Shown: positions 3,763 to 56,801, counted from the stretch's first letter. The stretch is DNA of 64,000 nucleotides from Octopus bimaculoides (GCF_001194135.2 NC_068989.1:95353283-95417282); one strand, 5' to 3'. Program-made: numbers and translations. The notes: a model not told the origin generated them from the sequence alone.

Positions 3763-3973
3763 CTCTACTCTAGGCACAAGCCCGAAACTGAGGGGGGAGG
3801 GAGCAGTCAATTAGATCGACCCCAGTACCCAACTGGTACTTAATTTATCGATCCCGAAAGGATGAAAGGCAAAGTCGACCTCGGCGGAATTTGAACTCAG
3901 AACGTAGTGCCAGACGAAATGCCGCTAAGCATTTCGCCTGGCGTGCTAACGTTTCTGCCAATTCGCCGCCTTT
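3763..3973 (-). mobile_element. tRNA-derived SINE, family B, with 20-bp target-site duplication
   Basis: Core GGATGAAAGGCAAAGTCGACCTCGGCGGAATTTGAACTCAG. Identical TGACAGTTCGCAATATTCTT at 3743-3762 and 3974-3993. Confidence 0.92.
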
Positions 3974-4002: not shown

Positions 4003-4215
4003 AGGCAGTGAGCTGGCAGACTCGTTAGCGCGCCGTTCAAAATGCTTAGCGTGATTTTGTCCGTCTCTATGTTCTTAGTTCAAATTCTGCAGATGTCGAC
4101 TTTACCTTTCATCCTTTCGGATTCGATAATCTAAGTACCAGTTGATCACTGGGGTCGAGGTAATCAGTTAGCATCTCCAATCAAATTTCCGGCCTTGTGC
4201 CTATCGTAGGAAGGA
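4003..4215 (+). mobile_element. SINE family B
   Basis: Head GGCAGTGAGCTGGCAGA, B-box GTTCAAATTC, core GTCGACTTTACCTTTCATCCTTTCG. Further partial copies follow at about 4230-4290, 4430-4530 and 4545-4680. Confidence 0.85.
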
Positions 4216-6108: not shown

Positions 6109-6119
6109 TATATGCACAC

Positions 6120-6155
<36 letters not shown>

Positions 6156-6821
6156 ACACATATATATAACGGGGGTAGCTGATGAAGGAAAATGTTCTCT
6201 ATGTGGCTTGTGTGTTTTCTGTACTCTGGTTATTATTATTTTCTTGTCTACGTTTTGTTTGCAATGTCCTGTACCCAGATATGCACCTATATATACAGGT
6301 AGACGTAGGTATGCACATACCTGTGCGTATATATGCATATACTCATTTATTATTGTTTTACATGATCGAACGCCTGCGTCATCCCTGTTGTAAGTAGTTC
6401 TCAACTTTATATTTTCTGACGCGACTCTATCTCTTTNNNNNNNNNNNNNNNNNNNNNNNNNNNNNNNNNNNNNNNNNNNNNNNNNNNNNNNNNNNNNNNN
6501 NNNNNNNNNNNNNNNNNNNNNNNNNNNNNNNNNNNNNNNNNNNNNNNNNNNNNNNNNNNNNNNNNNNNNNNNNNNNNNNNNNNNNNNNNNNNNNNNNNNN
6601 NNNNNNNNNNNNNNNNNNNNNNNNNNNNNNNNNNNNNNNNNNNNNNNNNNNNNNNNNNNNNNNNNNNNNNNNNNNNNNNNNNNNNNNNNNNNNNNNNNNN
6701 NNNNNNNNNNNNNNNNNNNNNNNNNNNNNNNNNNNNNNNNNNNNNNNNNNNNNNNNNNNNNNNNNNNNNNNNNNNNNNNNNNNNNNNNNNNNNNNNNNNN
6801 NNNNNNNNNNTATATGCACAC

Positions 6822-6857
<36 letters not shown>

Positions 6858-7055
6858 ACACATATATATAACGGGGGTAGCTGATGAAGGAAAATGTTCT
6901 CTATGTGGCTTGTGTGTTTTCTGTACTCTGGTTATTATTATTTTCTTGTCTACGTTTTGTTTGCAATGTCCTGTACCCAGATATGCACCTATATATACAG
7001 GTAGACGTAGGTATGCACATACCTGTAGGTATATATGCATATACTCATTTATTAT

Positions 7056-7062
<7 letters not shown>
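6109..7062. repeat. ~250-bp direct duplication on both sides of a gap
   Basis: 6109-6360 recurs at 6811-7062 with one dinucleotide difference seen (TGTGCGT vs TGTAGGT). Probable haplotype or contig-overlap artefact. Confidence 0.85.
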
Positions 7063-7115: not shown

Positions 7116-7545
7116 ATCATCATCATCATCGTTTAACATCTGCTTTCCATGCTGGCATGGGTTGGATGGTTTGATTGAAAACTGGTGATCCAGAAGGCTG
7201 CACCAGGCTCCAATCTGATCTTGCAAAGTTTCTACAGCTAGATGCCCTTCCTATCGCCAACTACTCTGAGAGTGTAGTGGGTAATTTTACATGCCAACGG
7301 CATGAGGGCCAGTCAGACGGTTCTGGCAACGACCACGCTCAAAAGGTGTTTTTACGTGCTACCTGGATGGGAGCCAGTCCGGTGGCACTGGCAACAGCCA
7401 CGCTTGAATGTTGTTTTTCACGTGCCACCAGCAAAGTGCCAGTAAGGCGACACTGGCAATGATTATGCTCAAATGGTGCTTTTCACATGTCACCAGCATG
7501 GGAGCCAATCCGTGGCCCTGTCAACGATTACACTCGGAGGTGCTT
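7116..7545 (-). mobile_element. RTE-tail-type repeat, family C, with an internal ~65-bp minisatellite
   Basis: (CAT)n then CGTTTAACATCTGCTTTCCATGCTGGCATGGGTTGGA (reverse of the family tail). Repeat units start near 7285, 7349, 7413, 7479 and 7543. Confidence 0.75.
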
Positions 7546-11616: not shown

Positions 11617-11808
11617 AGACAGCAAGCTGGCAGAAATATTAACACACTGGGCAAAATGCTTGTCTGAGTTCTAGCTCCACCGAGGTCGACTTTGCCTTTC
11701 ATCATTTCAGGGTCGATAAATCAAGTACCAGTTGTGTACCAAGATCGGTCTAATTGACTGGCCTCTTCCCTCAAAATTTCGGGCCTTGTGCCTAGAGTAG
11801 AAAAGAAT
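11617..11808 (+). mobile_element. SINE family B
   Basis: CAAGCTGGCAGAA head and CCGAGGTCGACTTTGCCTTTCATC core. Confidence 0.82.
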
Positions 11809-13704: not shown

Positions 13705-14242
13705 ATATCTGTTTAAGTTTAACTACTGTACAAACTTAGACACTAGAAGACATTGATTGACCTACAAACTAGACATTGCTCAAACTACAAAGACAATAAT
13801 ACATACATACAAATNNNNNNNNNNNNNNNNNNNNATATATATATATATGTTGTTATGTCCTGTTATTTGTATTTGTGTAACATTCTCTGTTTTTTTTTAT
13901 GTCCTTGTTTTTGTATACATTCACTGCTTTCTTCCAAGGAATCTAATGCTCTAAGCTTAGTTTTTCCTTGGGGCTGGCCAGATTGGAGCAATCTCAAGTA
14001 TAACCAACTAAAATTGCAAAGATAATCTGGAACTCGACTGAGGAAAGAAAACTCCGAATGACCCGTCCTTGTTTTCTTTGTATCGTCTGTCTGGATGTTT
14101 TGTTGTCCCTTTTTTGTATCATCTAACTGTCTGGATGTTTTGCGTTCTTGTCCCATTTTGTATTATATATATACATATATATATATATATATACATATGA
14201 ACATACATGCAAACTTATATATTCATATAGGTACAATATATG

Positions 14243-15110
14243 CATATATACAAGACCACAGGCACCAAACAATATCTAGTATTTAGTTCATGTCACCCAA
14301 GACATATCAAAACAAATGTCCCCTTCAACCTTGCAAGAAGGATGTGCACCATAGTGTCTAGAAAAAATACCAGAGTTCTAAGATTGCAAGAGCTTAAAAA
14401 CGTACTCCAGAACAGGCACTGCCCAACTCAACTCATAAATGAAGGCATTAAACGTACAAAATCGACTGATATTAAAACATTAAGAAAAGCCATACACAAC
14501 AATACACCTATCTTTAAAACAGTCTTATGTCTCCACATTCAACCCCAGAAACAAAGAAGCATTTAAAATCATTGTCCAATACTCCATAAGGACCCCAAAC
14601 TTAAGGAAATTTTGCATAACCAAAAGACCATTAAGAGCATCAAACAACCTAAGACATTAAAGAAGATCCTCACAGATGCCAAACTATTCTCTAGAACAAC
14701 AGATGCAAGAGTCAAAAAGTGTGGTCGCCCTAATTGCAGAATATGTCCCAATCTGTTAGAAGGATCAGAATTCCATTTCAGACAAGAGAAAATTTTCAAA
14801 ATCGAATCTTACTTCACTTGCACCTTCCAAGTATTTATGTAATCAGATGCTTGGGCTGCCATACACACTATGTTGATTCACCAGGAATGTTGCTCAGACA
14901 GAGATGTACGGTCCACAGACAACAAATATCCTCCCCACAATATCGCCAAATATATCTGTCAACACATTGACAAATGTGCAGAATGATTACAACCATAATT
15001 TGTAATTTTCCCATTTTATCAACTTGCTTTCTGGACCTCAATGCAAGTAAGACTGAATAAAGAAGGCCCATTTATTTCAAAATATAAACTAGAATTAAAT
15101 ATGGACCCAT
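14243..15110 (+). mobile_element. Penelope-like retroelement 3' part: RT C-terminus, Cys-rich linker and GIY-YIG endonuclease, frameshifted
   Basis: YKTTGTKQYLVFSSCHPRHIKTNVPFNLARRMCTIV (PLE RT C-terminus), KKCGRPNCRICP linker, IYVIRCLGCHTHY..LRQRCTVHRQQI (GIY-YIG-like). Confidence 0.88.
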
Positions 15111-17777: not shown

Positions 17778-17982
17778 CACATTTTGGCACAAGGCCAGTA
17801 ACTTCAGGGGAGAGGAAAAGTCAATCACAACAACCCCAGTGTTCGACTGGTATTTATTGACTCTGAAAGAATGAAAGGCAAAGTGGACCTCAGCAGAATC
17901 TGAACTTAGAACATGAAGATGGATGAAATGTTACTAAGCAGTTTGCTGCCTGACGAGATAACGATTTTCCCAGCTCACCGCC

Positions 17983-20639: not shown

Positions 20640-20850
20640 TTACAAGGCTGACACAGTCATTTGCACACTGGGAAAAATATTAAGTGGTATTTTATGTCTT
20701 CACATTCTGAGTTCAAATCCCACCAAGGTCAACTTTGTCTTTCGTCCTTTCTGAATCAATAAAATGAGTACCAGTCATGTACTGAGGACAATGTAATCAA
20801 TCTTCCCCTCCGCCAGAATTGTGACTTTGTGCCAAAATTTGAAATCAATC
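20640..20850 (+). mobile_element. SINE family B
   Basis: GAGTTCAAATCCCACCAAGGTCAACTTTGTCTTTC core. An inverted partial copy lies at about 20430-20520. Confidence 0.75.
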
Positions 20851-25392: not shown

Positions 25393-25463
25393 CTGGTGTG
25401 CCATCCTAGTGTGCCATTCTGGTGTGCCATCCTGGTGTGCCATCCTGGTGTGCCATCCTGGTG
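25393..25463. repeat. 13-bp minisatellite (CTGGTGTGCCATC), about 5.5 copies
   Basis: Direct reading. Confidence 0.92.
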
Positions 25464-25760
25464 TTGTTGATCACTGTGGCGCAAAACATAACAACCAAAA
25501 ATACAAGTTTTACATGCCATATGGCAAATCTCTTGACCAAAATATAAACAAACTGTACAAATGAAAGAAGATTAAATTCTTATAACGTAGTTTATTTATA
25601 ATAATTTTATATGTGTGTGAATAAATAGATATATCGCATATCATCATCATCATTTATATATACATATTACATCATGTATATATATGTATATATATATATA
25701 TCCGTTGACTGAACACTATTCAATTTTTTTTCTCCGTGTTTTTCTCCTTGTCTCCGTATT

Positions 25761-29431: not shown

Positions 29432-30100
29432 GTGAAAAGATTTGTTACAGCTCCTATGAAGATATGTAAGAGAGTCAACAGGGGTCAGTCAGGGGCTGTT
29501 TCTCAACCTTCTATGTCAAGAATTAAGCATGAAACTATAAAGAAGCCAAGTCTTACAAGGGAAGAACTTTGCAGGTACATTGGCGAAACAACCATTTGTA
29601 GAACTACGCAATGTTGTCTTTTGAAAATATTCAGTAAACCAGTGACATCAGTTAAAAAGCCTCCTTTAAACAAAAAAATACATGCAAATCATCAAAATTA
29701 TGCTGCTTTAGCCTTTGATGGTGCATGTACCATGAGTGGAAACATTTCAGGCATACAAAAGAGATTAAAAGACATGTTTCCTAGTATGCATTTTGTACAC
29801 TGTGGAAACCAGTCTCTGGACCTTGTCCTCGAAGAAGTTGGATCTATGGTTGCGATGGTCACTGATGCATTGAACTTTGTTCACCAAATCACCATTCTTC
29901 TGAGAAATGTTATCATGTTGCAAGTCTGTATCTGTTGCATCAAGCGAGAGAATGTCCATCCCACATGGAGTCATCATTGTGACTCCAAGCCACAATGATG
30001 CAGCATCGTCCAACTCACTGTGCTGTAATGCATGAACATAAAATTTTGTGCAACACAAACACTTTGGACATCCTCTTGAAAAACCTCATTGCCAAAACGA
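29432..30100 (+). mobile_element. Decayed hAT-superfamily transposase fragment
   Basis: ALAFDGACTMSGNISGIQKRLKDMFPSMHFVHCGNQSLDLVL matches the hAT YDGASNMSG...GVQ..I....P...YVHCxxHxLNL segment. Confidence 0.72.
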
Positions 30101-30938: not shown

Positions 30939-31268
30939 GTTAGCTTGGGAAGTTAAGCAGAAAAGTCGAGAGATATGAGAAGTTGGGAAGTGAAGCAGTT
31001 GTGGTCAATGAAAAGGATAGCAATAGTACCAAATAATTGTCGGAGTCCTGGGAACAGTGAGCAAAAATCTCGAGAAGTACGTGGAACAAATAGGGGCTGC
31101 AATAAGAGTGGAACACTTGTAAAGAACAGCACTGCTTGGAACCACTCGAATACTCCGGAAGGTGCTCGAAAATTAAGAGGTGTTACTTTAGTTCACTGGT
31201 AGGGAACAGCTGACACTGTAGTACATCTCCAGTGTCAGAAGCTATGCAAAGGCAATAATAATAATAAC
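30937..31268 (+). mobile_element. 5'-truncated R4/Dong-like RLE retrotransposon, 3' end with UTR
   Basis: WEVKQLWSMK..IVGVLGTVSKNLEKYVEQIGAAIRVEHL*RTALLGTTRILRKVLEN* plus UTR and AAT tail, bounded by (TAA)n on both sides. Confidence 0.82.
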
Positions 31269-31297: not shown

Positions 31298-31450
31298 TTT
31301 CCTATAGACACAAGGCCTGAAATCATAGGGGAAGGCATTGGCTGATTACATCTACCCCAGTACATGACCGGTACTTATTCTATCAGCATTGAAAAGATGA
31401 AAGGTAAAATCAACCTCGGCAGAATTTGAACTCAGAGTGTAAAGATGAAC
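31298..31450 (-). mobile_element. SINE family B (partial)
   Basis: GATGAAAGGTAAAATCAACCTCGGCAGAATTTGAACTCAG. Confidence 0.78.
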
Positions 31451-31552: not shown

Positions 31553-32260
31553 GCACTGTACAAGCAATTGAAAACGAATGAAACTGAAAATAGGTGGGTA
31601 AAGAAAAGAATGCATGGACAATTTCATAGGGATGTTGAAGAGAAGACAGACAAAGAAAAAAGATGGTAATACTTGAAATCACTTCAAAAAGAACCAATTG
31701 CATCTAATACAGAATAGACAACACAGCAGAAAGTGGTAAGTGCAGAATCTGTGGACAAAATGGTGAAACTGTATGGCATATTACCAGTCAATGTATGCCA
31801 CTAGCCCAGAAGGAATATAAGAGATGCCATGACAATATAGTAAGGCACTTTGCAACAAGCATGGACTTGACAGAGCAAAAAATTGGTGCGACCACAAACC
31901 TGAAGGCAACGTCAAAAATAGAAATGCAAAGATCCTATGGGATTTCATGATTCAGTGTGACCATGAGATAGAGAATAGGAAGCCAGACATAGTCTTAATT
32001 GAGAAAGAAAACAAACGCTACTGGATCATAGATATAGCATGCCCAGCTGACAACATGGTATGCAATAAGGAAGAAAGAAAAGTCGAGAGATACGACAGGT
32101 TAGCTTGGGAAGTTAAGCAGTTGTGGTCGATGAAAAAGGTAGTAGTAGTAACAATAATTGTCGGAGTCCTGGGAACAGTGAATAAAAATCTAGAGAAGTA
32201 CATGGAACAAATAGGGGCTGCAATAAGGGTGGAGCACTTGCAGAAAACAGCACTGCCTGC
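31550..32260 (+). mobile_element. R4/Dong-like non-LTR retrotransposon C-terminal fragment (CCHC knuckle plus PD-(D/E)xK endonuclease)
   Basis: MHGQFHR, CRICGQNGETVWHITSQC (Cx2Cx7Hx4C), KRCHDNIVR, KILWDFMIQCDHEIENRKPDIVLIEK..IIDIACP..KEERKVERY. Begins at the edge of an (AAT)n tract. Confidence 0.88.
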
Positions 32261-32560
32261 ACCATATACATATATATGTTGATATATATATATGTATATA
32301 TATGTTGATATATACATGTATATATATATATGTATATATACATATATACTTACACATTCCAAAGGGAAACAATATATATATATGATATATACATATGATA
32401 CTCACAATTTTGGGGGTAGAAGGACATGTGACCACCTGGCCCAGCACCAGGAGAAAGCTAATTAGAAGACTATAAATACAAACCATCAATGGAATTGTAA
32501 AATGGTTTAATTATTTCCAAAGATTTAACGTATTTAACATGTAATGAAGCATTATAGAAA

Positions 32561-32616
<56 letters not shown>

Positions 32617-32850
32617 TGTGTGTGTGTGTGTAAAAGATTGTGTGTTTGTGTTTGAATAATGTCTTTAATAGTTGATATAAAATAGTTCTAAGAAGCCATA
32701 AAGTTGTCAATTAGCTCAAAGCCTACTCGAAAATGCTAACAGTAGCACTGGAGCAGTAAAAGATACTTTGCCAGTTTGTCTTGGTTGTTTATTGGTTGAC
32801 CTAATTTAGATAATTTCTACTGGAACAACAGAAAAACAAAAAGAAAAGTG

Positions 32851-32896
<46 letters not shown>

Positions 32897-32955
32897 AATG
32901 TGAATCGCTGGCGATTTTTTTTCCCTCCGTTTTCCCTTCCCATTGGACTTTTTCT

Positions 32956-32990
32956 GTTTCTGAAGAAGAGCTTTGATCGAAACGTTAGAC
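32956..32990 (+). ncRNA. Minimal type I hammerhead ribozyme motif with intact core, in a Penelope-UTR-like repeat (about 32905-33070)
   Basis: GTTT-CTGAAGA-A-GAGC-TTT-GATC-GAAA-C-GTT-AGAC: CUGANGA and GAAA intact, stem I with one G-U pair, stem II with one mismatch, GUU triplet. Confidence 0.65.
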
Positions 32991-33436
32991 CACCTTTCTT
33001 TCCTTCCCTGAGCGTCTGCTAATATTTCGCATGTACCACATACTCAAGTTGTTGTTTTTTGTGTTTGTTCTTGTTCTTTTTTTACTTGCTACATACATAT
33101 TATAAATTATGAATTATTATGTGAAATAAACAGGAAAACAGTTTTCGTGCTACACTGTAAGGGTGAAATCCATTGTTAAAATGGGGAACACTACAGTTAT
33201 CAGCTAAAATTGAAATTATGACAAATTGGCTACTTTATAAATAGAGATAATTTTACCTCCCAGTTTTGTGACAGTTTTTCTGTGTGACAGTTTTGTTCAA
33301 TTGGATTCTGGAAGATGTGATTGCCTGCTTGGTTCATGCACTTTAGGCTTTGTGTAGGGCATTTGTGGAATTGTTTATGCTCCAGGAGTTCGATAGAACT
33401 ATTGTCAAATTTAAGATAATTTGTGTCACATCTGGG

Positions 33437-36411
33437 TCCAAAGTATCTACATTCCAAGGATCGACATCCAAGGTTCGACATCTTAGGTTCCACATTCCAA
33501 GATTCGATATCCAAGGACTAAATTCCAAGGTTCGACATTCCACGGTTCGACACTCCAAGGTTCAACATTTCAAGGTTCGTCATTCCAAGGTTCGACATCC
33601 AAGTTTCGAAATCCAAGGTTCGACATTCCAAGGTTTGTAACCCAAGGTTGAGCACTGAATTGATAGCCGAATTTTATGACATTCCAAGGATCGACATCGT
33701 AGGTTCAACATCCAAGGTTCGACATACAATGTTCGACATTCCATGGCGCGACATTTCAAGGTACGACATTCCAAGGTTCGACATTCCAAGGTTCGGCATT
33801 CAAAGGTTCGACATTAAAATGTTCGACATACTAAGGTTCGACATTCCAAGGTTTGCAACCCAACGTCGAACTCTGAATTGATAGACAAATTTTATGATAT
33901 TCCAGCGTTCGACATTCCAAGGTTCGACATACCAAAGTTAGACATTCCAAGGTTCGACATTCCAAAGTTCGTAATCCAAGGAATGCATTCCAGGATTCGA
34001 CATTCCAAGGTTCAACATTCTAAGGTTTGAAAACCAAGGTTAAAACTGAAAGGCTAGTCAAATGTTATGAAATTCCAAGGTTCGTAATTCCAAAGTACGA
34101 CATCCAAGGATCGATATTCCAAGGTTCGACATTCCAAGGTTTGATATTCCAAGGTTTGAAACCAAAGGTTAAACACTGAATAGCGAGACAAATTTTATGA
34201 CATTACAAGGTTCGACATGGCAAGGTTTGACATCCAATGTTCGACATTCCCTGGTTTGAAATGCAAGGTTCGATATTCCAAGGTTCGACATTCCAAGGTT
34301 CGACATTCCAAGGTTCGACCTTTAAGGTTCGACATTTCAAGGTTGGACATTCAAAGGATCGACATTCCAAGGTTGGACATTCCAAGGTTGGACATTCCAA
34401 GGTTGGACATTCCAAGGTTTGAAACCCAAGGTTGAACACTGAATTGCTAAACAAATTTTATGACGTTCCAAGATTCGATCCTTTCCATGTCGAGCCTTGG
34501 AATGTCGTACCTTGTATGTCGAACCTTGGATGTCGATCCTTCGATGTCGAAATTTGGAATGTCGAACTGTGGAATGTCGAATCTTGGTATGTCGGACCTT
34601 GGAATGACGAACCTTGGAATGTCGGGCCTTGAAATATCGAACCCTGGAATGTCGATCACCGTATGTCGAACATTGGATGTCGAACCTTGAAATGTCGAAC
34701 CTTCGAATATCGATCTTTTAAATGTCGAACCTTGGAATGTCAAACCTTGGATTGCCGAACCTTGATATGTCGAACGTTGAAATGTCGAAATTTGGAATGT
34801 TGTACCTTGGAATGTCGATCCTTGGAATATCGATCATTGGAATGTTGTCCTTGGAATCAAACCTTTGAATGTCGCACATTGGAATGTCGAACCTGGGATG
34901 TCGAACCATGGATTGTCGAACCTTGTAATATCGAAACTTTGAATTTCGAACCTTGGAACGTCAAATCTTGAACTATCGAACCTTGAAATTTCTAACTTTG
35001 GAACATCAAACCTTGGAATGTCGACCCTTAGAATGTAGTCCTTGGAATCTCAAACCTTGGATTGCCGAAACTTTGAATGTCGAAACTTGGAATGTAGTCC
35101 TTGGAATGTCAAACCTTGGAATGTCAGTGCTTGGAATGTAGAATTTGGAATCTCAAACCTTGGGATGTCGAATCTTAGAATGTCGAACCTTGAACTGTCG
35201 AACCTTGGAACGACAAACCTTGAAATGTTAAACCTTGGAATGTCGAACCTTGGAATGTCGAACCTTGGAAAGTCGTACCTTGAAATATCGAACCTTGGAA
35301 CGTCAAACCTTTGAATGTCAAACTTTGGAACGTAGTCCTTGGAATGTCTAACTTGGATTGCCGATCCTTGGAATGGAATACCTCGGAATGTAGAACCTTG
35401 GAATGCCGAAACTTGGAACGTAAAATCCTGGAATGTCGGACATTGGAATGTCGAACCTTGCAACGTCAAACCTTGAAATGTCGAACCTTGGAGTGTCGAA
35501 CCTTGGAATGTAGTCCTTGGAATATCAATCCTTGGAATGTCGAACCTTGCAACGGCAAACCTTGAAATGTCAAACCTTGGAATGTCAGACCTTGGAATGT
35601 AGACTTTGGAATGTCGAACCTTAGAATGTCGAACCTTCGAATATCGATCCTTGGAATGTAGTCCTTGGGTATCAAACTTTGAAATGTCGAACCTTGAAAT
35701 ATCGAACCTTGGAATGTCGAATCTTGGAATGTCGAACCTGGGATGTCGAACCTTGGAATGTCGGGCCTTGGAATGTCGGACTTTGGAATGTCGAACCTTG
35801 GATGTCGAATCTTGGTTTGTCGGACCTTGGAATAACGAACCTTGGAATGTCGGGCCTTGGAATATCGAACCTTGGAATGTCGAACCTGGGATGTCGAACC
35901 TTGGAATGTCAAACCTTGAAATGTCGATCTTTGGAATGTCGAAACCTGGAATGTCGAATCTTGGAACGTCAAAAACTGGAATGTCCGACCTTGGAATGTC
36001 GAACCTTGGAATGTAGTCCTTGGAATGTCAAGCCTTGGAACGTGAAACCTTGAAATGTCAAACCTCGGAATGTCGAACCTCGGAATGTCGAACCTTGGAA
36101 TGTCGAATTTGGAACGTCAAACCCTGGATTGTCGGGCCCTGTATTGTCGAACCTTGGAATGCCGAACCTTGAAATGTCGAACCTTAAAATGTCGAACCTT
36201 GAAATGTCGAACCATGGAATGTCGAACCTTGGAATGTCGAAACTTGGAATATCGATCCTTGGAACATCGAACCTGAGATGTTGAACCTTTGAATGTCGAA
36301 CTTTGGAATATTGATCCATGGAATGTCAAACCTCAGAATGTCGAACCTTGGAATGTCGAACCTTGGAATGTCGAACCTTGGAATATCGATCCTTGGAATG
36401 TAGTCCTTGGA
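33437..36411. repeat. Palindromic tandem array of a 15-mer (TTCCAAGGTTCGACA); possible foldback-type element
   Basis: Plus-orientation units at 33437-34478, reverse-orientation units (TGTCGAACCTTGGAA) at 34487-36411, orientation switch over about 8 nt. Confidence 0.95.
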
Positions 36412-36951
36412 TATCAAACAGACAGTCAGTAGTACTATTGCTATTGTGGCTGCACATAAGTGAGCTATAATTTCTTATGACTATTTTGCTCTAATCCATG
36501 GTGAAATAGATATATAATGAATGACATTCCAGTGGTGACCATCCTGTTATTTTGCATACCTTCTTTTAAAAGATGGTTGAGTGCATTTTAGGGAATTTTA
36601 CTGTCATTTCTGGCAACTGAAGTGACCATGTGTAGGGTCCCCTATTGTCTCATCCCCTTTTGGTCGGTATCACAAGCAAGTAACGATTTACTGTAGCAGC
36701 AACATCTGCAGCAATATGTAAACGACAGGTAATTTGTTAGTTTTCTTTGTTACTGCATTTAATGGCATTTAAGGTGGACATTTTCACAAAAAAACATATT
36801 TGTCTCCAAAAACGTCCCATATGTGAAGCTGAGTGTCCCATAAACAAATTTTGTCCCTGATGCATTTTTCCTGAATATGTGTTGCTGAAATTGGATGGCA
36901 TCAAATACACCTGTGTGTCTTTTATGTCATCAAATACATTACTTTCTAAGT

Positions 36952-37153
36952 TTAACCCTTTTGATTCCAGCCTGCTTACGACCGACCCTCGTTGGGAACT
37001 AAATAAAAAAAAAATCTTCCTGCAAAATTTCATTAAGTTCAAGACACCAGGTTAATTAAGGACAAAGCTATTTCGTTAATTTTTCATTGCTTTTCAAATC
37101 AATTGAAAGAAAGGCAGAAAATTTCAATGGAAATGCAGCAATGAAAGGGTTAA
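36952..37153. mobile_element. piggyBac-type MITE
   Basis: TTAA at both ends with CCCTTT...AAAGGG termini. Confidence 0.75.
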
Positions 37154-37545
37154 TTGTTCTGGCTACTTTTAGCTTAGAGAATGGTGTAGTTATGTAAGTG
37201 TAGGGGATGCAGAAATAAATAATTCTAATAAATGAATTAATGAATTAATGAAGGAAGAACTGAGAAATAATTAAGGGAAATCATTTGAAATTTATCAAAA
37301 GGAAGCATTTTTGAGTTTAGACTGACTTCTTTATTACTTTTCTATTAATGACTTGTATATATGTGTTTGTGGGGGGTTGGGTGTTTGTGTGCGTGTGTGA
37401 GGGTGGGTGTTTATTGGAAAAGCTATTTGGAAGGTTTACTTAAACAATTTGGATCAAGACAGAAAAGAATAGTCAGGATTGGAAGCGAATTGTGACCGAC
37501 AGCATTTGATGGTCTGTTTGGTATTCTGATATGTATGTATGTATG

Positions 37546-37638
<93 letters not shown>

Positions 37639-37924
37639 AAGAGTTATGGAATGGAGTTTGGGAAATCTGGACTACATATTTAGCCCAGATTTCCCCTACT
37701 ATATTCCATAACTCTTTTCCACACACTCAGCAACCCCAGCTGCTTACCAAGGAATATAGAAAGAGATTTGTTTCTTCAGCTCATCATTCTTCGATAAAAG
37801 AGGAAATAATCCGCAATCTTTCTCTCTCAGTAAAGCACTATTGTCTCCTGAAAGTCGTTTTTTATATTTATTATGGATTGCTTGAAGCTAACCGTCTTCC
37901 TACACCTCGATCCTTGGATCTTAC

Positions 37925-38160
37925 ATTTATATATATTTCTTTATTGCCCACAGGAGGCTAAATATAGAGGGGACAAATGAGGACAGATAAAAGAGGTTAA
38001 GTCGATAACATCAATCCCAGTGTGTAATTAGTACTTAATTTATTGACCCCAAAAGGATGAAAGGCAAAGTCGACCTTGGTGGAATTTGAAGTCAGAACAT
38101 GAAGAAGGACAAAGAATCATCAAGTATTTCACCTGGTGTGCTAACGATTCTGCCACCTTA
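37925..38160 (-). mobile_element. SINE family B (longer tail variant)
   Basis: AAAGGATGAAAGGCAAAGTCGACCTTGGTGGAATTTGAA core. A second copy follows at about 38197-38340 and a partial at 39700-39775. Confidence 0.82.
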
Positions 38161-39177
38161 ATCTAAATAATAATTAGAAGAAGAATAGTAATAATAATCC
38201 TTTCTTTTATAGGGCACAGAACCCAAAATTTGGGGGAGGGGGATAGTCGAGTACATCAACCTCCAGTACTCAACTGGTACCAAAAAGAAGAAAAGCAAAG
38301 ACAACCATACCAGAATTTGAACTCAGAACATGAAGACAGAGATTGCACTGCCCTGCATTGTGGCCCTAACCCCTTTCTGTTGCTTGCACTTTAAAGTTCA
38401 CACCATGCAGAGTCAGAAAACATAGGAAAAGTGGCAACTCAGAACTCAGAATCTCTAAACCAGCAACAAGAAGGCATCACTTATTGATTATAGAGAATTG
38501 ATCTTTTTTTAGTTAATGCAAGGTTTCTTCCATCAACAGATAATTTCCTCCAGCCAGTTTTTATCAATAACATAACAAAAAAAAAAAGAAAAGAACAACA
38601 AAAAAAAAACAACTTGTGAATGAAATATTATAAATTGTTTAGAAAATTATAGCATATTGCAGTTCACCAATTTTCTATGTCGTGTATCAAAGTGAGCTGG
38701 CTTTGTGTCGTCACTTCTACATAAAAAGAAACTTTAATCTCTCATCTCTTCATCTATTACACTCTCACAGTCCTTTATCAATATTCCAGAGCATTGTTGT
38801 TGTTGTTGTTGTTGTTAATGTTAATATAGAAAACAATGCATTTAAAAAGTCCTTTTTTTTTTCTGAATGAATGAATTAAAATTTGGTTGCTGTAGTGTTG
38901 TTTGTTGTCCGAATATTATCAGAGAAAAGTGAAAAACAAGTGAAGCCATTTCAAAATTATCATTTACAATATTAGTTCTTCAAGATTGGGGGAGAAAAAG
39001 GAAGAAGAAGAAAAGATTTTTAAGCTTTAAGATGATGGAGCAAACATAGATGCTTTGTTGACATTGGTACAGGACAATCAGAAAGTTGGTGGAGAGAAGC
39101 CAATCCTGCCAAACCAGTCTGAACTCAAATATTTGCAAAGTTTAAAAGAAACAAAAAACCGCTGCATAAATAGATTT

Positions 39178-39435: not shown

Positions 39436-40041
39436 AATTCAAACAAGTGGAAGAATAGAAGAAATGAAGTTGATGATGCACAGACAATATATTAAAATTT
39501 AATTATATTTTAAAATATAGGAATACACTTAACCGGTTTCACATTAGATTTTCAAACGTCTAAAGCATATAAATATATGGATTAAATCTGTCCCCAGGAG
39601 TGGTCCATAGTGGAATTTGAACCTAGAACACAAAGACTGAGAACAATACCACAAGCCACCTTGCCTGATGCTCCAACACTTTCACTAATCTTTTTTGTTT
39701 TTTTCATTTTATTGACCCTGGAAGGATGAAAGGCAAAGTTGACCTCAGTGGGATTTGAACTCACAGGGCAGAGAACTAGGATCAAATATCTTAGTCTTAT
39801 GAACGTGGTACTCCAGCATGGCCTTAGCTGTGATACTAAAATTAACTAAAGCACTAATGAAACTGCTTGGCCTCAGACCATGTAAACGTCTCAGTTGAAG
39901 TTTAATGGATTTTGAGATGAATGTGTGTGACTCAGTAGGTAGTGTTGACATCGTGTGATAGTTGTGTCACCATCGTAATACAACTGGTGCCATTCATATC
40001 CAGCCTTCCATGAAAACAGTTTGATCAAAGGAAAACTTAAG

Positions 40042-46847: not shown

Positions 46848-47330
46848 CATAATTATTATTATTATTATCACTTTTTATAGCCAGGGATAGAATAAGAAAT
46901 AAGGAAAGAAATTGTAAATATAAAGTTTATACACTGTTTGTCAAGGTTCCATGATGTAATGCTTATCACATCTGCTTAACATGCAGAAGATTGTGAGTCT
47001 GAAACTTGCTGGAACCGTAGCTGACATTTTAAACCATCTGACCCATGCCAGCATGGAAACGGATGCTAAATGATGATGATGATGATGATGATGACTTCAT
47101 TAAAAAGAATTTGAATATATTAGTTTGTGTGTCTTTCTTTATCTGGAGGTGTGGTTTACTTCCCTGGCTTAATATTGATTAAGTTATAGATTGGATTGTT
47201 GTTGCAGTGGTTTTACAGCTTCAAAACAATGTGAAATATTTATAGAACAATTGCCCTAACGACAATTCACATTTGGCACACTGACTCCACTAATTAATTC
47301 ATTATGAAACTTCAACTACAACTTACACCT

Positions 47331-49417: not shown

Positions 49418-49600
49418 TCCTTTCTACTATAGGCACAAGGCCAGCAATGGGGGGAAGTGTGCAAGTCAGTTATGTCGGCCCTAATGCCCAGCTGGCACTT
49501 ATTTTGTCACCCCTGAAAGGATGAAAAGCAAAGGTGACCTTGGCAGAATTTGAACTCAGAACGTAGAGGAGAATGAAATGCCACGAAGCATTTTGCTCAG
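49418..49600 (-). mobile_element. SINE family B
   Basis: CCTTTCTACTATAGGCACAAGG..GAAAGGATGAAAAGCAAAGGTGACCTTGGCAGAATTTGAACTCAG. Confidence 0.8.
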
Positions 49601-56543: not shown

Positions 56544-56755
56544 CTTTCTACTAAAGGCACAAAGCCTGCAATTTTTTAGGAGGGGGATAAGTCAATTACA
56601 TCAACCCCAGTGACTCACTGGTACTTATTTCACTGACCCCAGAAGGATGAAAGGCAAAGTCAACCTTGGTGGAATTCGAACTCAGAATGTAGAGACAGAC
56701 AAAATGCTGATAAGCATTTCATTTGACGTGCTAACGACTCTGCCAGCTTGCTGCC

Positions 56756-56757
<2 letters not shown>
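56544..56757 (-). mobile_element. SINE family B between (AAT)n tracts
   Basis: GAAGGATGAAAGGCAAAGTCAACCTTGGTGGAATTCGAACTCAG..CTGCCAGCTTGCTGCCTT. Confidence 0.85.

Positions 56758-56801
<44 letters not shown>

What the first reader, a model, noticed from the sequence alone, without database searches (positions are those of the whole stretch)
33437..36411. 3-kb head-to-head palindrome built from a 15-bp unit, with matching termini: candidate foldback-type element or long hairpin RNA locus
Seen: about 1.04 kb of (TTCCAAGGTTCGACA)n switches over about 8 nt (34479-34486) into about 1.92 kb of its reverse complement. The outer ends carry the same rare variant units in inverted orientation: left TCCAAAGTATCTACATTCCAAGGATCGA, right reverse-complemented TCCAAGGA-CTACATTCCAAGGATCGA. 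Diagnostic variants are shared across the axis: CGACATCGTAGGTTCAACATCCAAGGTTCGACATAC near 33690-33727 vs the reverse complement near 34515-34550. Established: Drosophila FB-type foldback transposons have long inverted arms made of short tandem repeats, and coleoid cephalopods show very extensive ADAR editing of dsRNA. Inference: this is either a non-autonomous foldback-like element or a satellite inversion. If transcribed, it would fold into about 1 kb of dsRNA feeding editing or small-RNA pathways. I found no target-site duplication.
Basis: partly seen in the sequence, partly recalled or inferred. Interest (0 to 1): 0.8.

Follow-up and report, generated by a model that had tools for sequence, protein, structure and literature searches.

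The report
Two back-to-back inverted minisatellite arrays
A 3-kb stretch of a decayed 15-base tandem repeat flips orientation once in the middle; this is an ordinary satellite arrangement, with no sign here that it is a mobile foldback element and no data on whether it makes hairpin RNA.

Summary
The core observation holds. A 15-bp unit (TTCCAAGGTTCGACA) fills 33437-34486 in + orientation and 34487-36411 in - orientation, and the switch takes 7 nt. 122 of the 123 near-matches in the window lie in this block, against 0.1 expected by chance.

It is not a true palindrome. The mirror register through the axis matches at chance level (23-33%). Every register between the arms gives about 73-74% identity, below the within-arm values (76-77% right, about 80% left).

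The arms also differ in build. The left arm carries five copies of a 46-47-nt spacer, which gives a higher-order repeat of variable length. The right arm has none.

The "matching rare termini" are recurrent internal variants; the right-end motif recurs 29/30 inside its own arm. The "shared diagnostic variants" score within the background range and are not mirror-placed. There is no target-site duplication, no inverted similarity in the unique flanks, and no other copy in the window.

Searches of metagenome, prokaryote and viral contigs, 5.8 billion proteins and the paper library found no relative.

Best reading: an old local minisatellite with one orientation switch, the kind described as "macro-dyad" satellite arrays. 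The foldback-transposon reading fails its defining tests. A single transcript would fold into a long, imperfect hairpin, but transcription cannot be tested here. Interest is low.

The parts
33437..34486 (+). Left sub-array. About 57-68 units of TTCCAAGGTTCGACA in + orientation, interrupted by five spacers, which gives a higher-order repeat of variable length (128-263 nt between spacer cores).
   Evidence: TRF period 15, 67.6 copies, 70% matches, plus a period-303 row at 33768-34329. Unit parsing. Higher-order copies are 80-84% identical.
33634..33680 (+). Spacer S1 (TTTGTAACCCAAGGTTGAGCACTGAATTGATAGCCGAATTTTATGAC).
   Evidence: Spacer core found at 33655-33679. Read.
33852..33898 (+). Spacer S2.
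   Evidence: Core at 33873-33897, 0 mismatches to the probe.
34026..34071 (+). Spacer S3, the most diverged copy.
   Evidence: Seen in the unit parse and in the aligned spacer contexts. Too diverged for the 3-mismatch scan.
34155..34201 (+). Spacer S4.
   Evidence: Core at 34176-34200.
34418..34464 (+). Spacer S5. It lies one unit from the axis and has no counterpart on the other side of it.
   Evidence: Core at 34439-34463. The spacer probe gave no minus-strand match anywhere in the window.
34465..34501 (.). Orientation-switch junction. Last + unit 34465-34479, 7-nt CCTTTCC at 34480-34486, first - unit 34487-34501. The only perfect palindrome here is TCGA at 34475-34478, present in every unit.
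   Evidence: Sequence. Palindrome scan: at most 2 bp per side. The 31-mer across the junction is unique in the window.
34487..36411 (-). Right sub-array. About 121-129 units of the same 15-mer in - orientation, with no spacers and no regular higher-order period.
   Evidence: TRF period 15, 129.3 copies, 75% matches. Parse. Self-alignments at all shifts give 76-77%.

Best explanation
This is a single-locus, old and degenerate 15-bp minisatellite made of two abutting sub-arrays in opposite orientation: an asymmetric 'macro-dyad' satellite arrangement.

**Likely history (inferred).** An array of TTCCAAGGTTCGACA units underwent one local rearrangement that put part of it in reverse orientation. 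That was either a fold-back or template-switch inverted duplication, for which the TCGA palindrome in every unit offers microhomology, or an inversion with breakpoints in and at the edge of the array. Each arm then evolved on its own by slippage and unequal exchange. The left arm fixed a higher-order unit containing a 46-47-nt spacer. The right arm expanded as plain 15-mers with its own variant set. Any original mirror symmetry was erased.

**Function.** Nothing indicates that it moves or has a function. As DNA, arms that are about 74% alike are too diverged to extrude a cruciform easily, which would explain why it is tolerated. If something transcribes through it, the RNA would form a long imperfect hairpin as a by-product.
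For: **Shown**
- Unit, orientation and boundaries.
- No mirror register: 19-33% on the axis antidiagonals, and 73-74% in every gapped register.
- Within-arm identity exceeds between-arm identity: right 76-77%, left higher-order copies 80-84%.
- Five spacers in the left arm only.
- Arm-specific variants. GGTCCGACA-type changes (T>C at unit position 10) occur in 10/103 right-arm units against 0/46 on the left. GGTTGGACA occurs in 4/46 left-arm units against 1/103 on the right.
- About 11-12% substitutions per site from the consensus in both arms, so the array is old or fast-decaying.
- Terminal motifs recur internally.
- No TSD and no flank similarity, direct or inverted: Smith-Waterman scores do not exceed the shuffles (at or below the shuffle mean for inverted, within one sd of it for direct).
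- No unit or spacer relic elsewhere in the 64 kb.
- Every 51-mer of the array is unique and the junction 31-mer is unique, so the layout can be resolved by reads and is not forced by graph ambiguity.

**Literature**
- Satellite arrays made of two inversely oriented, unequal sub-arrays are frequent in Tribolium freemani, at 71.8% of TfSat01 arrays (PMC12581902).
Against: - Only one locus and one assembly could be examined. The source genome and its relatives are not in any collection I could search by DNA, so dispersed copies cannot be excluded.
- The rearrangement mechanism is inferred, not shown.
- The window is a gap-rich short-read scaffold: nine N runs, and a 252-nt 99.2% duplicate flanking one gap. 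The junction has no independent confirmation.
Confidence: 0.7

Rival explanations
1. It is a non-autonomous foldback-type DNA transposon. Its long inverted arms are built of 15-bp subrepeats that serve as transposase binding sites, and it is mobilised in trans.
For: - Two inverted arms of short tandem repeats resemble the tandem-repeat domain of foldback TIRs (PMC4079207).
- Arms of unequal length are known in such elements.
- Transposon debris, including a weak hAT-type match, lies nearby in the window.
Against: - No terminal flanking domain. The ends are ordinary repeat variants that recur internally.
- No TSD.
- No middle domain; the arms abut over 7 nt.
- No inverted similarity in the adjoining unique DNA.
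- The arms are no closer to each other than random registers of the family, and they differ in architecture.
- No second copy in 64 kb.
- No match in any searchable collection.
Confidence: 0.07
2. It is an assembly or library artefact. Two arrays of the same satellite, or the two strands of one array, were joined head-to-head by a chimeric read or a scaffolding error.
For: - The window is a short-read scaffold with nine N gaps of variable size.
- At least one gap is flanked by a 99.2% duplicate, a sign of local redundancy.
- The arms share exact inverted words of up to 50 nt.
Against: - The arms are not mirror images, so this is not a missed-adapter or strand-fold-back read artefact.
- All 51-mers are unique, and only 4.1% of 31-mers are repeated.
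- The junction is a unique sequence whose only palindrome is TCGA, so a graph cannot create it without a read containing it.
- Both outer flanks are unique and there is no gap inside the block.
Confidence: 0.13
3. It is a functional long-hairpin RNA locus. The block is transcribed as one RNA whose arms pair, feeding ADAR editing or small-RNA production.
For: - In silico, the whole block folds at -1401 kcal/mol with 851 inter-arm pairs, and 81% of the left arm is paired.
- The central 1 kb has z = -30 against shuffles.
- Pairing of nearby inverted repeats is the conventional source of ADAR substrates in Metazoa (PMC9989829).
Against: - Any inverted tandem array folds this way by construction.
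- The duplex is poor: 108 helices, mean 7.9 bp, and only 6 of at least 20 bp.
- No promoter, host gene or exon could be tied to it, and the surrounding ORF fragments gave no Pfam hit passing a curated cut-off.
- The arms drift apart rather than co-vary.
- The taxon is unverified.
Confidence: 0.06

Closest known systems
Satellite arrays with inversely oriented sub-arrays ('macro-dyad symmetry'), e.g. TfSat01/TfSat03 of Tribolium freemani (PMC12581902)
   Same: Both have tandem units of one family in two adjacent sub-arrays of opposite orientation. In both, the arms are unequal and a short inversion segment joins them.
   Different: - Unit size: the Tribolium repeats are satellite monomers; here the unit is a 15-bp minisatellite.
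- Scale: there, thousands of arrays share a few conserved inversion-segment types in centromeric regions. Here there is a single 3-kb locus in TE-rich, non-coding DNA.
- Whether the junction recurs elsewhere cannot be tested.
Foldback transposons (Drosophila FB, Tetris, Galileo; PMC4079207)
   Same: Both have long inverted arms containing tandem subrepeats, and neither has coding capacity.
   Different: Foldback elements have a conserved outermost flanking domain, a middle domain, 8-10 bp TSDs and multiple copies. None of these was found here.
Hairpin-RNA (hpRNA) and inverted-repeat dsRNA loci edited by ADAR or diced into endo-siRNAs
   Same: The locus has the potential to form a long intramolecular duplex.
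   Different: Known loci are defined by transcripts, small RNAs or editing clusters. Here there is only a predicted, heavily mismatched fold.

Membership tests
Foldback (FB-type) transposon | Long inverted arms containing tandem subrepeats | tested here: met
   Arms of 1.05 kb (+) and 1.92 kb (-) built from the same 15-bp unit.
Foldback (FB-type) transposon | A conserved terminal (flanking-domain) sequence present in inverted orientation at both outer ends and specific to the ends | tested here: not met
   The terminal 30-mers match each other no better than they match 10 or more internal sites. The right-end motif recurs 29/30 internally. The unique flanks show no inverted similarity.
Foldback (FB-type) transposon | Target-site duplication (8-10 bp in Tetris and FB) | tested here: not met
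   No direct repeat at the boundaries. The longest shared word is a 4-mer, off the boundaries.
Foldback (FB-type) transposon | Middle domain between the arms | tested here: not met
   The arms are separated by 7 nt.
Foldback (FB-type) transposon | Multiple dispersed copies sharing ends and structure, and empty sites | tested here: inconclusive
   None in the 64-kb window. None in metagenome, prokaryote-genome or viral contigs or as predicted peptides. The source genome itself could not be searched.
Satellite/minisatellite with inversely oriented sub-arrays | Head-to-tail tandem units of one family far above chance | tested here: met
   123 matches against 0.10 expected. TRF scores 687 and 1940.
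Satellite/minisatellite with inversely oriented sub-arrays | Adjacent sub-arrays of the same unit in opposite orientation, joined by a short inversion segment | tested here: met
   Strand of the hits flips between 34424 and 34488. Junction read.
Satellite/minisatellite with inversely oriented sub-arrays | Independent homogenisation of each sub-array (within-arm identity above between-arm identity) | tested here: met
   76-84% within arms against 73-74% between arms. Arm-specific variants and spacers.
Hairpin-RNA / ADAR-substrate locus | Ability of one transcript to form a long duplex | tested here: met
   851 inter-arm pairs at -1401 kcal/mol, but mean helix length is 7.9 bp. z = -30 for the central 1 kb.
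Hairpin-RNA / ADAR-substrate locus | Transcription across both arms, with small RNAs or clustered A-to-G changes | not testable with these tools
   No expression data are available, and no gene or Pfam-supported exon was found around the block.

The most novel reading that the evidence does not exclude
The block is transcribed through both arms, for example as part of an intron or a non-coding RNA. Its roughly 850-bp imperfect hairpin would then be a hyper-editing or endo-siRNA source built from a minisatellite rather than from paired transposons. The orientation switch would be kept because of that RNA.
Probability: 0.06. Interest if true: 0.45.

Novelty: new member of a known kind. Interest (0 to 1): 0.15.

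Why it matters
It matters little beyond annotation. It records a previously undescribed 15-bp minisatellite family; the unit appears in no paper I could search. It also gives a clean example of how an inverted tandem array can look like a transposon to the eye: terminal "signature" variants and cross-axis "diagnostic" variants are expected by chance inside a higher-order repeat. If expression data later showed a hairpin transcript, it would be one more repeat-derived dsRNA source, a class that is already well documented.

Tried and rejected
- **True palindrome or mirror duplication.** Rejected: the axis antidiagonals are at chance, and every register gives about 74%.
- **Terminal inverted signature.** Rejected: the motifs recur internally.
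- **Diverged TIR in the unique flanks.** Rejected: Smith-Waterman scores do not exceed the shuffles for 150, 400 and 800 nt.
- **Array as the 3' tail or internal repeat of a neighbouring transposon.** The nearest transposon ORF ends at 32282, 1.15 kb upstream. The flanks 32300-33436 and 36412-37990 are unique in the window, and the spacer matches no dispersed repeat.
- **Coding pentapeptide repeat.** The consensus has no stop codon in any of the six frames. About a quarter of unit spacings are 14 nt, so the frame breaks, and the longest ORF is 168 aa. Array peptides have no relatives among 5.8 billion proteins.
- **tRNA or SINE origin of the unit.** The unit's GGTTCGA resembles a pol III B-box core (from memory). 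There is no tRNA or Rfam hit in the block.
- **Public relatives.** A 30-mer found nothing. A 20-mer found 4 isolated chance hits in GC-rich metagenome contigs, with no arrays.
- **Organism identification.** The neighbouring transposon ORF has relatives only in unnamed ENA contigs. The best locus shares only a transposon piece at 75% identity.
- **Pfam on surrounding ORF fragments.** No hit passed a curated cut-off; the only matches were two weak ones below cut-off (DUF659, E 0.0034; DUF3997, E 0.043).

Full report
**What is there**

The sequence at 33437-36411 consists of a 15-bp unit, consensus TTCCAAGGTTCGACA. TRF reports a period-15 array at 33437-34419 (67.6 copies, 70% matches). It reports the reverse-complement unit at 34487-36401 (129.3 copies, 75% matches).

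A scan for the unit with up to two mismatches gives 123 hits in the window, against 0.10 expected from shuffles. Of these, 122 lie in the block. All hits up to 34424 are on the + strand and all from 34488 on are on the - strand.

The switch is abrupt. The last + unit is 34465-34479, followed by CCTTTCC at 34480-34486, and the first - unit is 34487-34501.

**It is not a palindrome in the strict sense**

If the arms were mirror copies, the antidiagonal through the axis (position sum about 68973) would stand out. It matches at 19-33%, which is chance level.

With gaps allowed, the left arm aligns to the right arm in every register at 73-74% identity, and no register is favoured. Within-arm similarity is higher: 76-77% at all shifts in the right arm, and 80-84% between higher-order copies in the left arm.

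The arms also differ in architecture. The left arm contains five copies of a 46-47-nt spacer, of the form TTTGAAACCCAAGGTTGAACACTGAATTGCTAAACAAATTTTATGAC. They lie at 33634-33680, 33852-33898, 34026-34071, 34155-34201 and 34418-34464. This gives a higher-order repeat of variable length; TRF also reports a period of 303.

The spacer has no minus-strand match anywhere, so the right arm lacks it entirely. The last spacer sits one unit from the axis and has no partner across it.

Each arm has its own preferred variants:
- T>C at unit position 10 occurs in 10/103 right-arm units and 0/46 left-arm units.
- GGTTGGACA occurs in 4/46 left-arm units and 1/103 right-arm units.

Units differ from the consensus at about 11-12% of sites in both arms.

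**The two arguments for a mobile element do not hold**

- *Termini.* The quoted terminal strings are real, but the variants are neither rare nor end-specific.
  - The left terminal 30-mer scores 20 against the right end and 20-21 against at least ten internal sites of the right arm.
  - The right terminal 30-mer recurs 29/30 inside its own arm (near 35640-35668).
  - It also fits an internal site of the left arm (33510) better than the left end.
  - These are position-specific variants of the higher-order repeat.
- *Shared diagnostic variants.* The stretch (33678-33755 against 34487-34566) aligns 66/77. Its score of 47.5-52 lies within the background for 75-nt probes (mean 43.5, sd 6.2, max 61.5). 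The two copies are not mirror-placed.
- *Target-site duplication.* There is none.
- *Flanks.* There is no inverted or direct similarity between the unique flanks at 150, 400 or 800 nt; scores do not exceed the shuffles.
- *Other copies.* There is no other unit cluster or spacer copy in the window.

Foldback elements as described for Tetris have an outermost flanking domain, a tandem-repeat domain, an inner domain, a middle domain and 8-10-bp TSDs (PMC4079207). Only the tandem-repeat feature is present here.

**Is it an artefact?**

The window is a short-read-type scaffold. It has nine N runs of variable size, and one gap (6437-6810) is flanked by a 252-nt, 99.2% direct duplicate. Caution is therefore warranted.

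Several points argue against an artefact:
- The arms are not mirror images, which excludes a read that folded back on itself.
- Every 51-mer in the block is unique, and only 4.1% of 31-mers are repeated.
- The 31-mer across the junction is unique, and the only palindrome at the junction is TCGA. I infer that an assembler could not have produced this junction without a read that contains it.

I put the artefact reading at about 0.13. Long reads would settle it.

**Relatives elsewhere**

- A two-unit 30-mer has no exact match in the JGI metagenome, GTDB genome or IMG/VR collections.
- A 20-mer that occurs ten times in the block gives four isolated hits in GC-rich metagenome contigs, with no arrays, so these are chance hits.
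- The array is open in many frames, so I used its translations as probes for arrays in other assemblies. The 168-aa ORF gave nothing at E<=0.001, and a six-frame consensus of the pentapeptides found no candidate at all.
- No paper in the searchable library contains the unit.
- The source organism could not be identified. A neighbouring transposon ORF has relatives only in unnamed ENA contigs. None of these collections holds the source genome, so dispersed copies in it remain untested.

**Surroundings**

The immediate flanks (32300-33436 and 36412-37990) are unique in the window. Around them lie decayed transposon fragments, a dispersed SINE-like repeat, and many microsatellites.

The ORF fragments I scanned gave no Pfam hit passing a curated cut-off, and no gene could be tied to the block. 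Rfam and ARAGORN find nothing in it.

**Most likely mechanism (inferred)**

One array of the 15-mer suffered a single rearrangement that reversed part of it. Two routes are plausible:
- a fold-back or template-switch inverted duplication, for which the TCGA palindrome in each unit (34475-34478 at the junction) offers microhomology;
- an inversion with one breakpoint inside the array and one at its edge.

Slippage and unequal exchange then reshaped each arm separately. This explains the lost mirror symmetry, the unequal lengths, the arm-specific variants, and the spacer-bearing higher-order repeat on one side only.

This layout is a known kind. In Tribolium freemani, 71.8% of TfSat01 arrays consist of two inversely oriented sub-arrays of unequal length (PMC12581902).

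**RNA reading**

Folded as one RNA, the block gives:
- -1401 kcal/mol;
- 851 inter-arm pairs, covering 81% of the left arm;
- 108 helices with a mean of 7.9 bp;
- only six helices of at least 20 bp (longest 37).

The central 1 kb has z = -30 against shuffles. This follows from the construction of any inverted array and says nothing about expression.

Pairing of nearby inverted repeats is in any case the conventional source of ADAR substrates across animals (PMC9989829). So even if the block were transcribed, it would be a routine case.

**Verdict**

This is an ordinary, previously undescribed minisatellite with one orientation switch. The foldback-transposon reading fails its defining tests at this locus, and the hairpin-RNA reading is untested and has low prior probability.

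- Confidence in the satellite reading: 0.7.
- Interest: 0.15.
- Novelty: a new member of a known kind.

Noticed in passing
window 6109-6360 and 6811-7062 (either side of the N run 6437-6810): A 252-nt direct duplicate at 99.2% identity flanks an assembly gap. It is probably unmerged contig ends, meaning local redundancy in the scaffold rather than a real tandem duplication.
   Followed up: partly
window 31708-32282 (+), with a partial second copy at 30959-31135: ORF fragments of a retroelement tail. By eye they show a Cys/His knuckle (CRICG...H...C) followed by KPDIVL...IIDIA...K, which resembles the C-terminal restriction-like endonuclease of R2-type LINEs. There are 19 relatives (50-78% identity) in unnamed ENA contigs. 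There is no meaningful Pfam hit. The two copies are 87-88% alike.
   Followed up: partly
window 14231-14967 (+): Overlapping ORF fragments that by eye resemble the C-terminal part of a Penelope-like element (a Cys motif, then an IYVIRC...YV GIY-YIG-like stretch). Pfam gave no hit, so this is unverified.
   Followed up: partly
window 38031-38198, 31342-31445, 3810-3960, 4011-4167, 11663-11728, 17852-17923, 20697-20799, 39708-39763, 49494-49562, 56585-56790: A dispersed SINE-like repeat of about 70-200 nt, 76-86% identical between copies, in both orientations. Two copies lie about 2 kb on either side of the array in the same orientation and do not touch its ends.
   Followed up: no
window 46945-47017 (+): Rfam tRNA match (40.3 bits, E 4.6e-5) that ARAGORN does not call. 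It may be a tRNA-derived repeat or a degenerate tRNA gene.
   Followed up: no
window 33437-36411 compared with the rest of the window: CpG observed/expected is 1.04 (left arm) and 1.18 (right arm), against 0.35 for the rest of the window. At the unit's CpG, TG variants far outnumber CA variants in both arms when read in unit orientation (21 against 3, and 8 against 2). This fits amplification of pre-existing variant units better than symmetric deamination after the switch.
   Followed up: partly
window 33437-36411, all six frames: The consensus unit has no stop codon in any frame, so the block yields overlapping ORFs of up to 168 aa on both strands (FQGST/SKVRH/PRFDI and CRTLE/VEPWN/SNLGM repeats). 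These are artefacts that a gene caller could mistake for genes.
   Followed up: yes
window 29432-29998 (+): A 188-aa ORF with a weak DUF659 match (E 0.0034, 17.5 bits, below the 34.7-bit cut-off). It may be a decayed hAT-type transposase fragment.
   Followed up: no
window 7285-7507 and 25393-25464: Other minisatellites: a 65-bp unit x3.4 (70% matches) and a 13-bp unit CTGGTGTGCCATC x5.5 (93% matches). Both are unrelated to the 15-mer.
   Followed up: no
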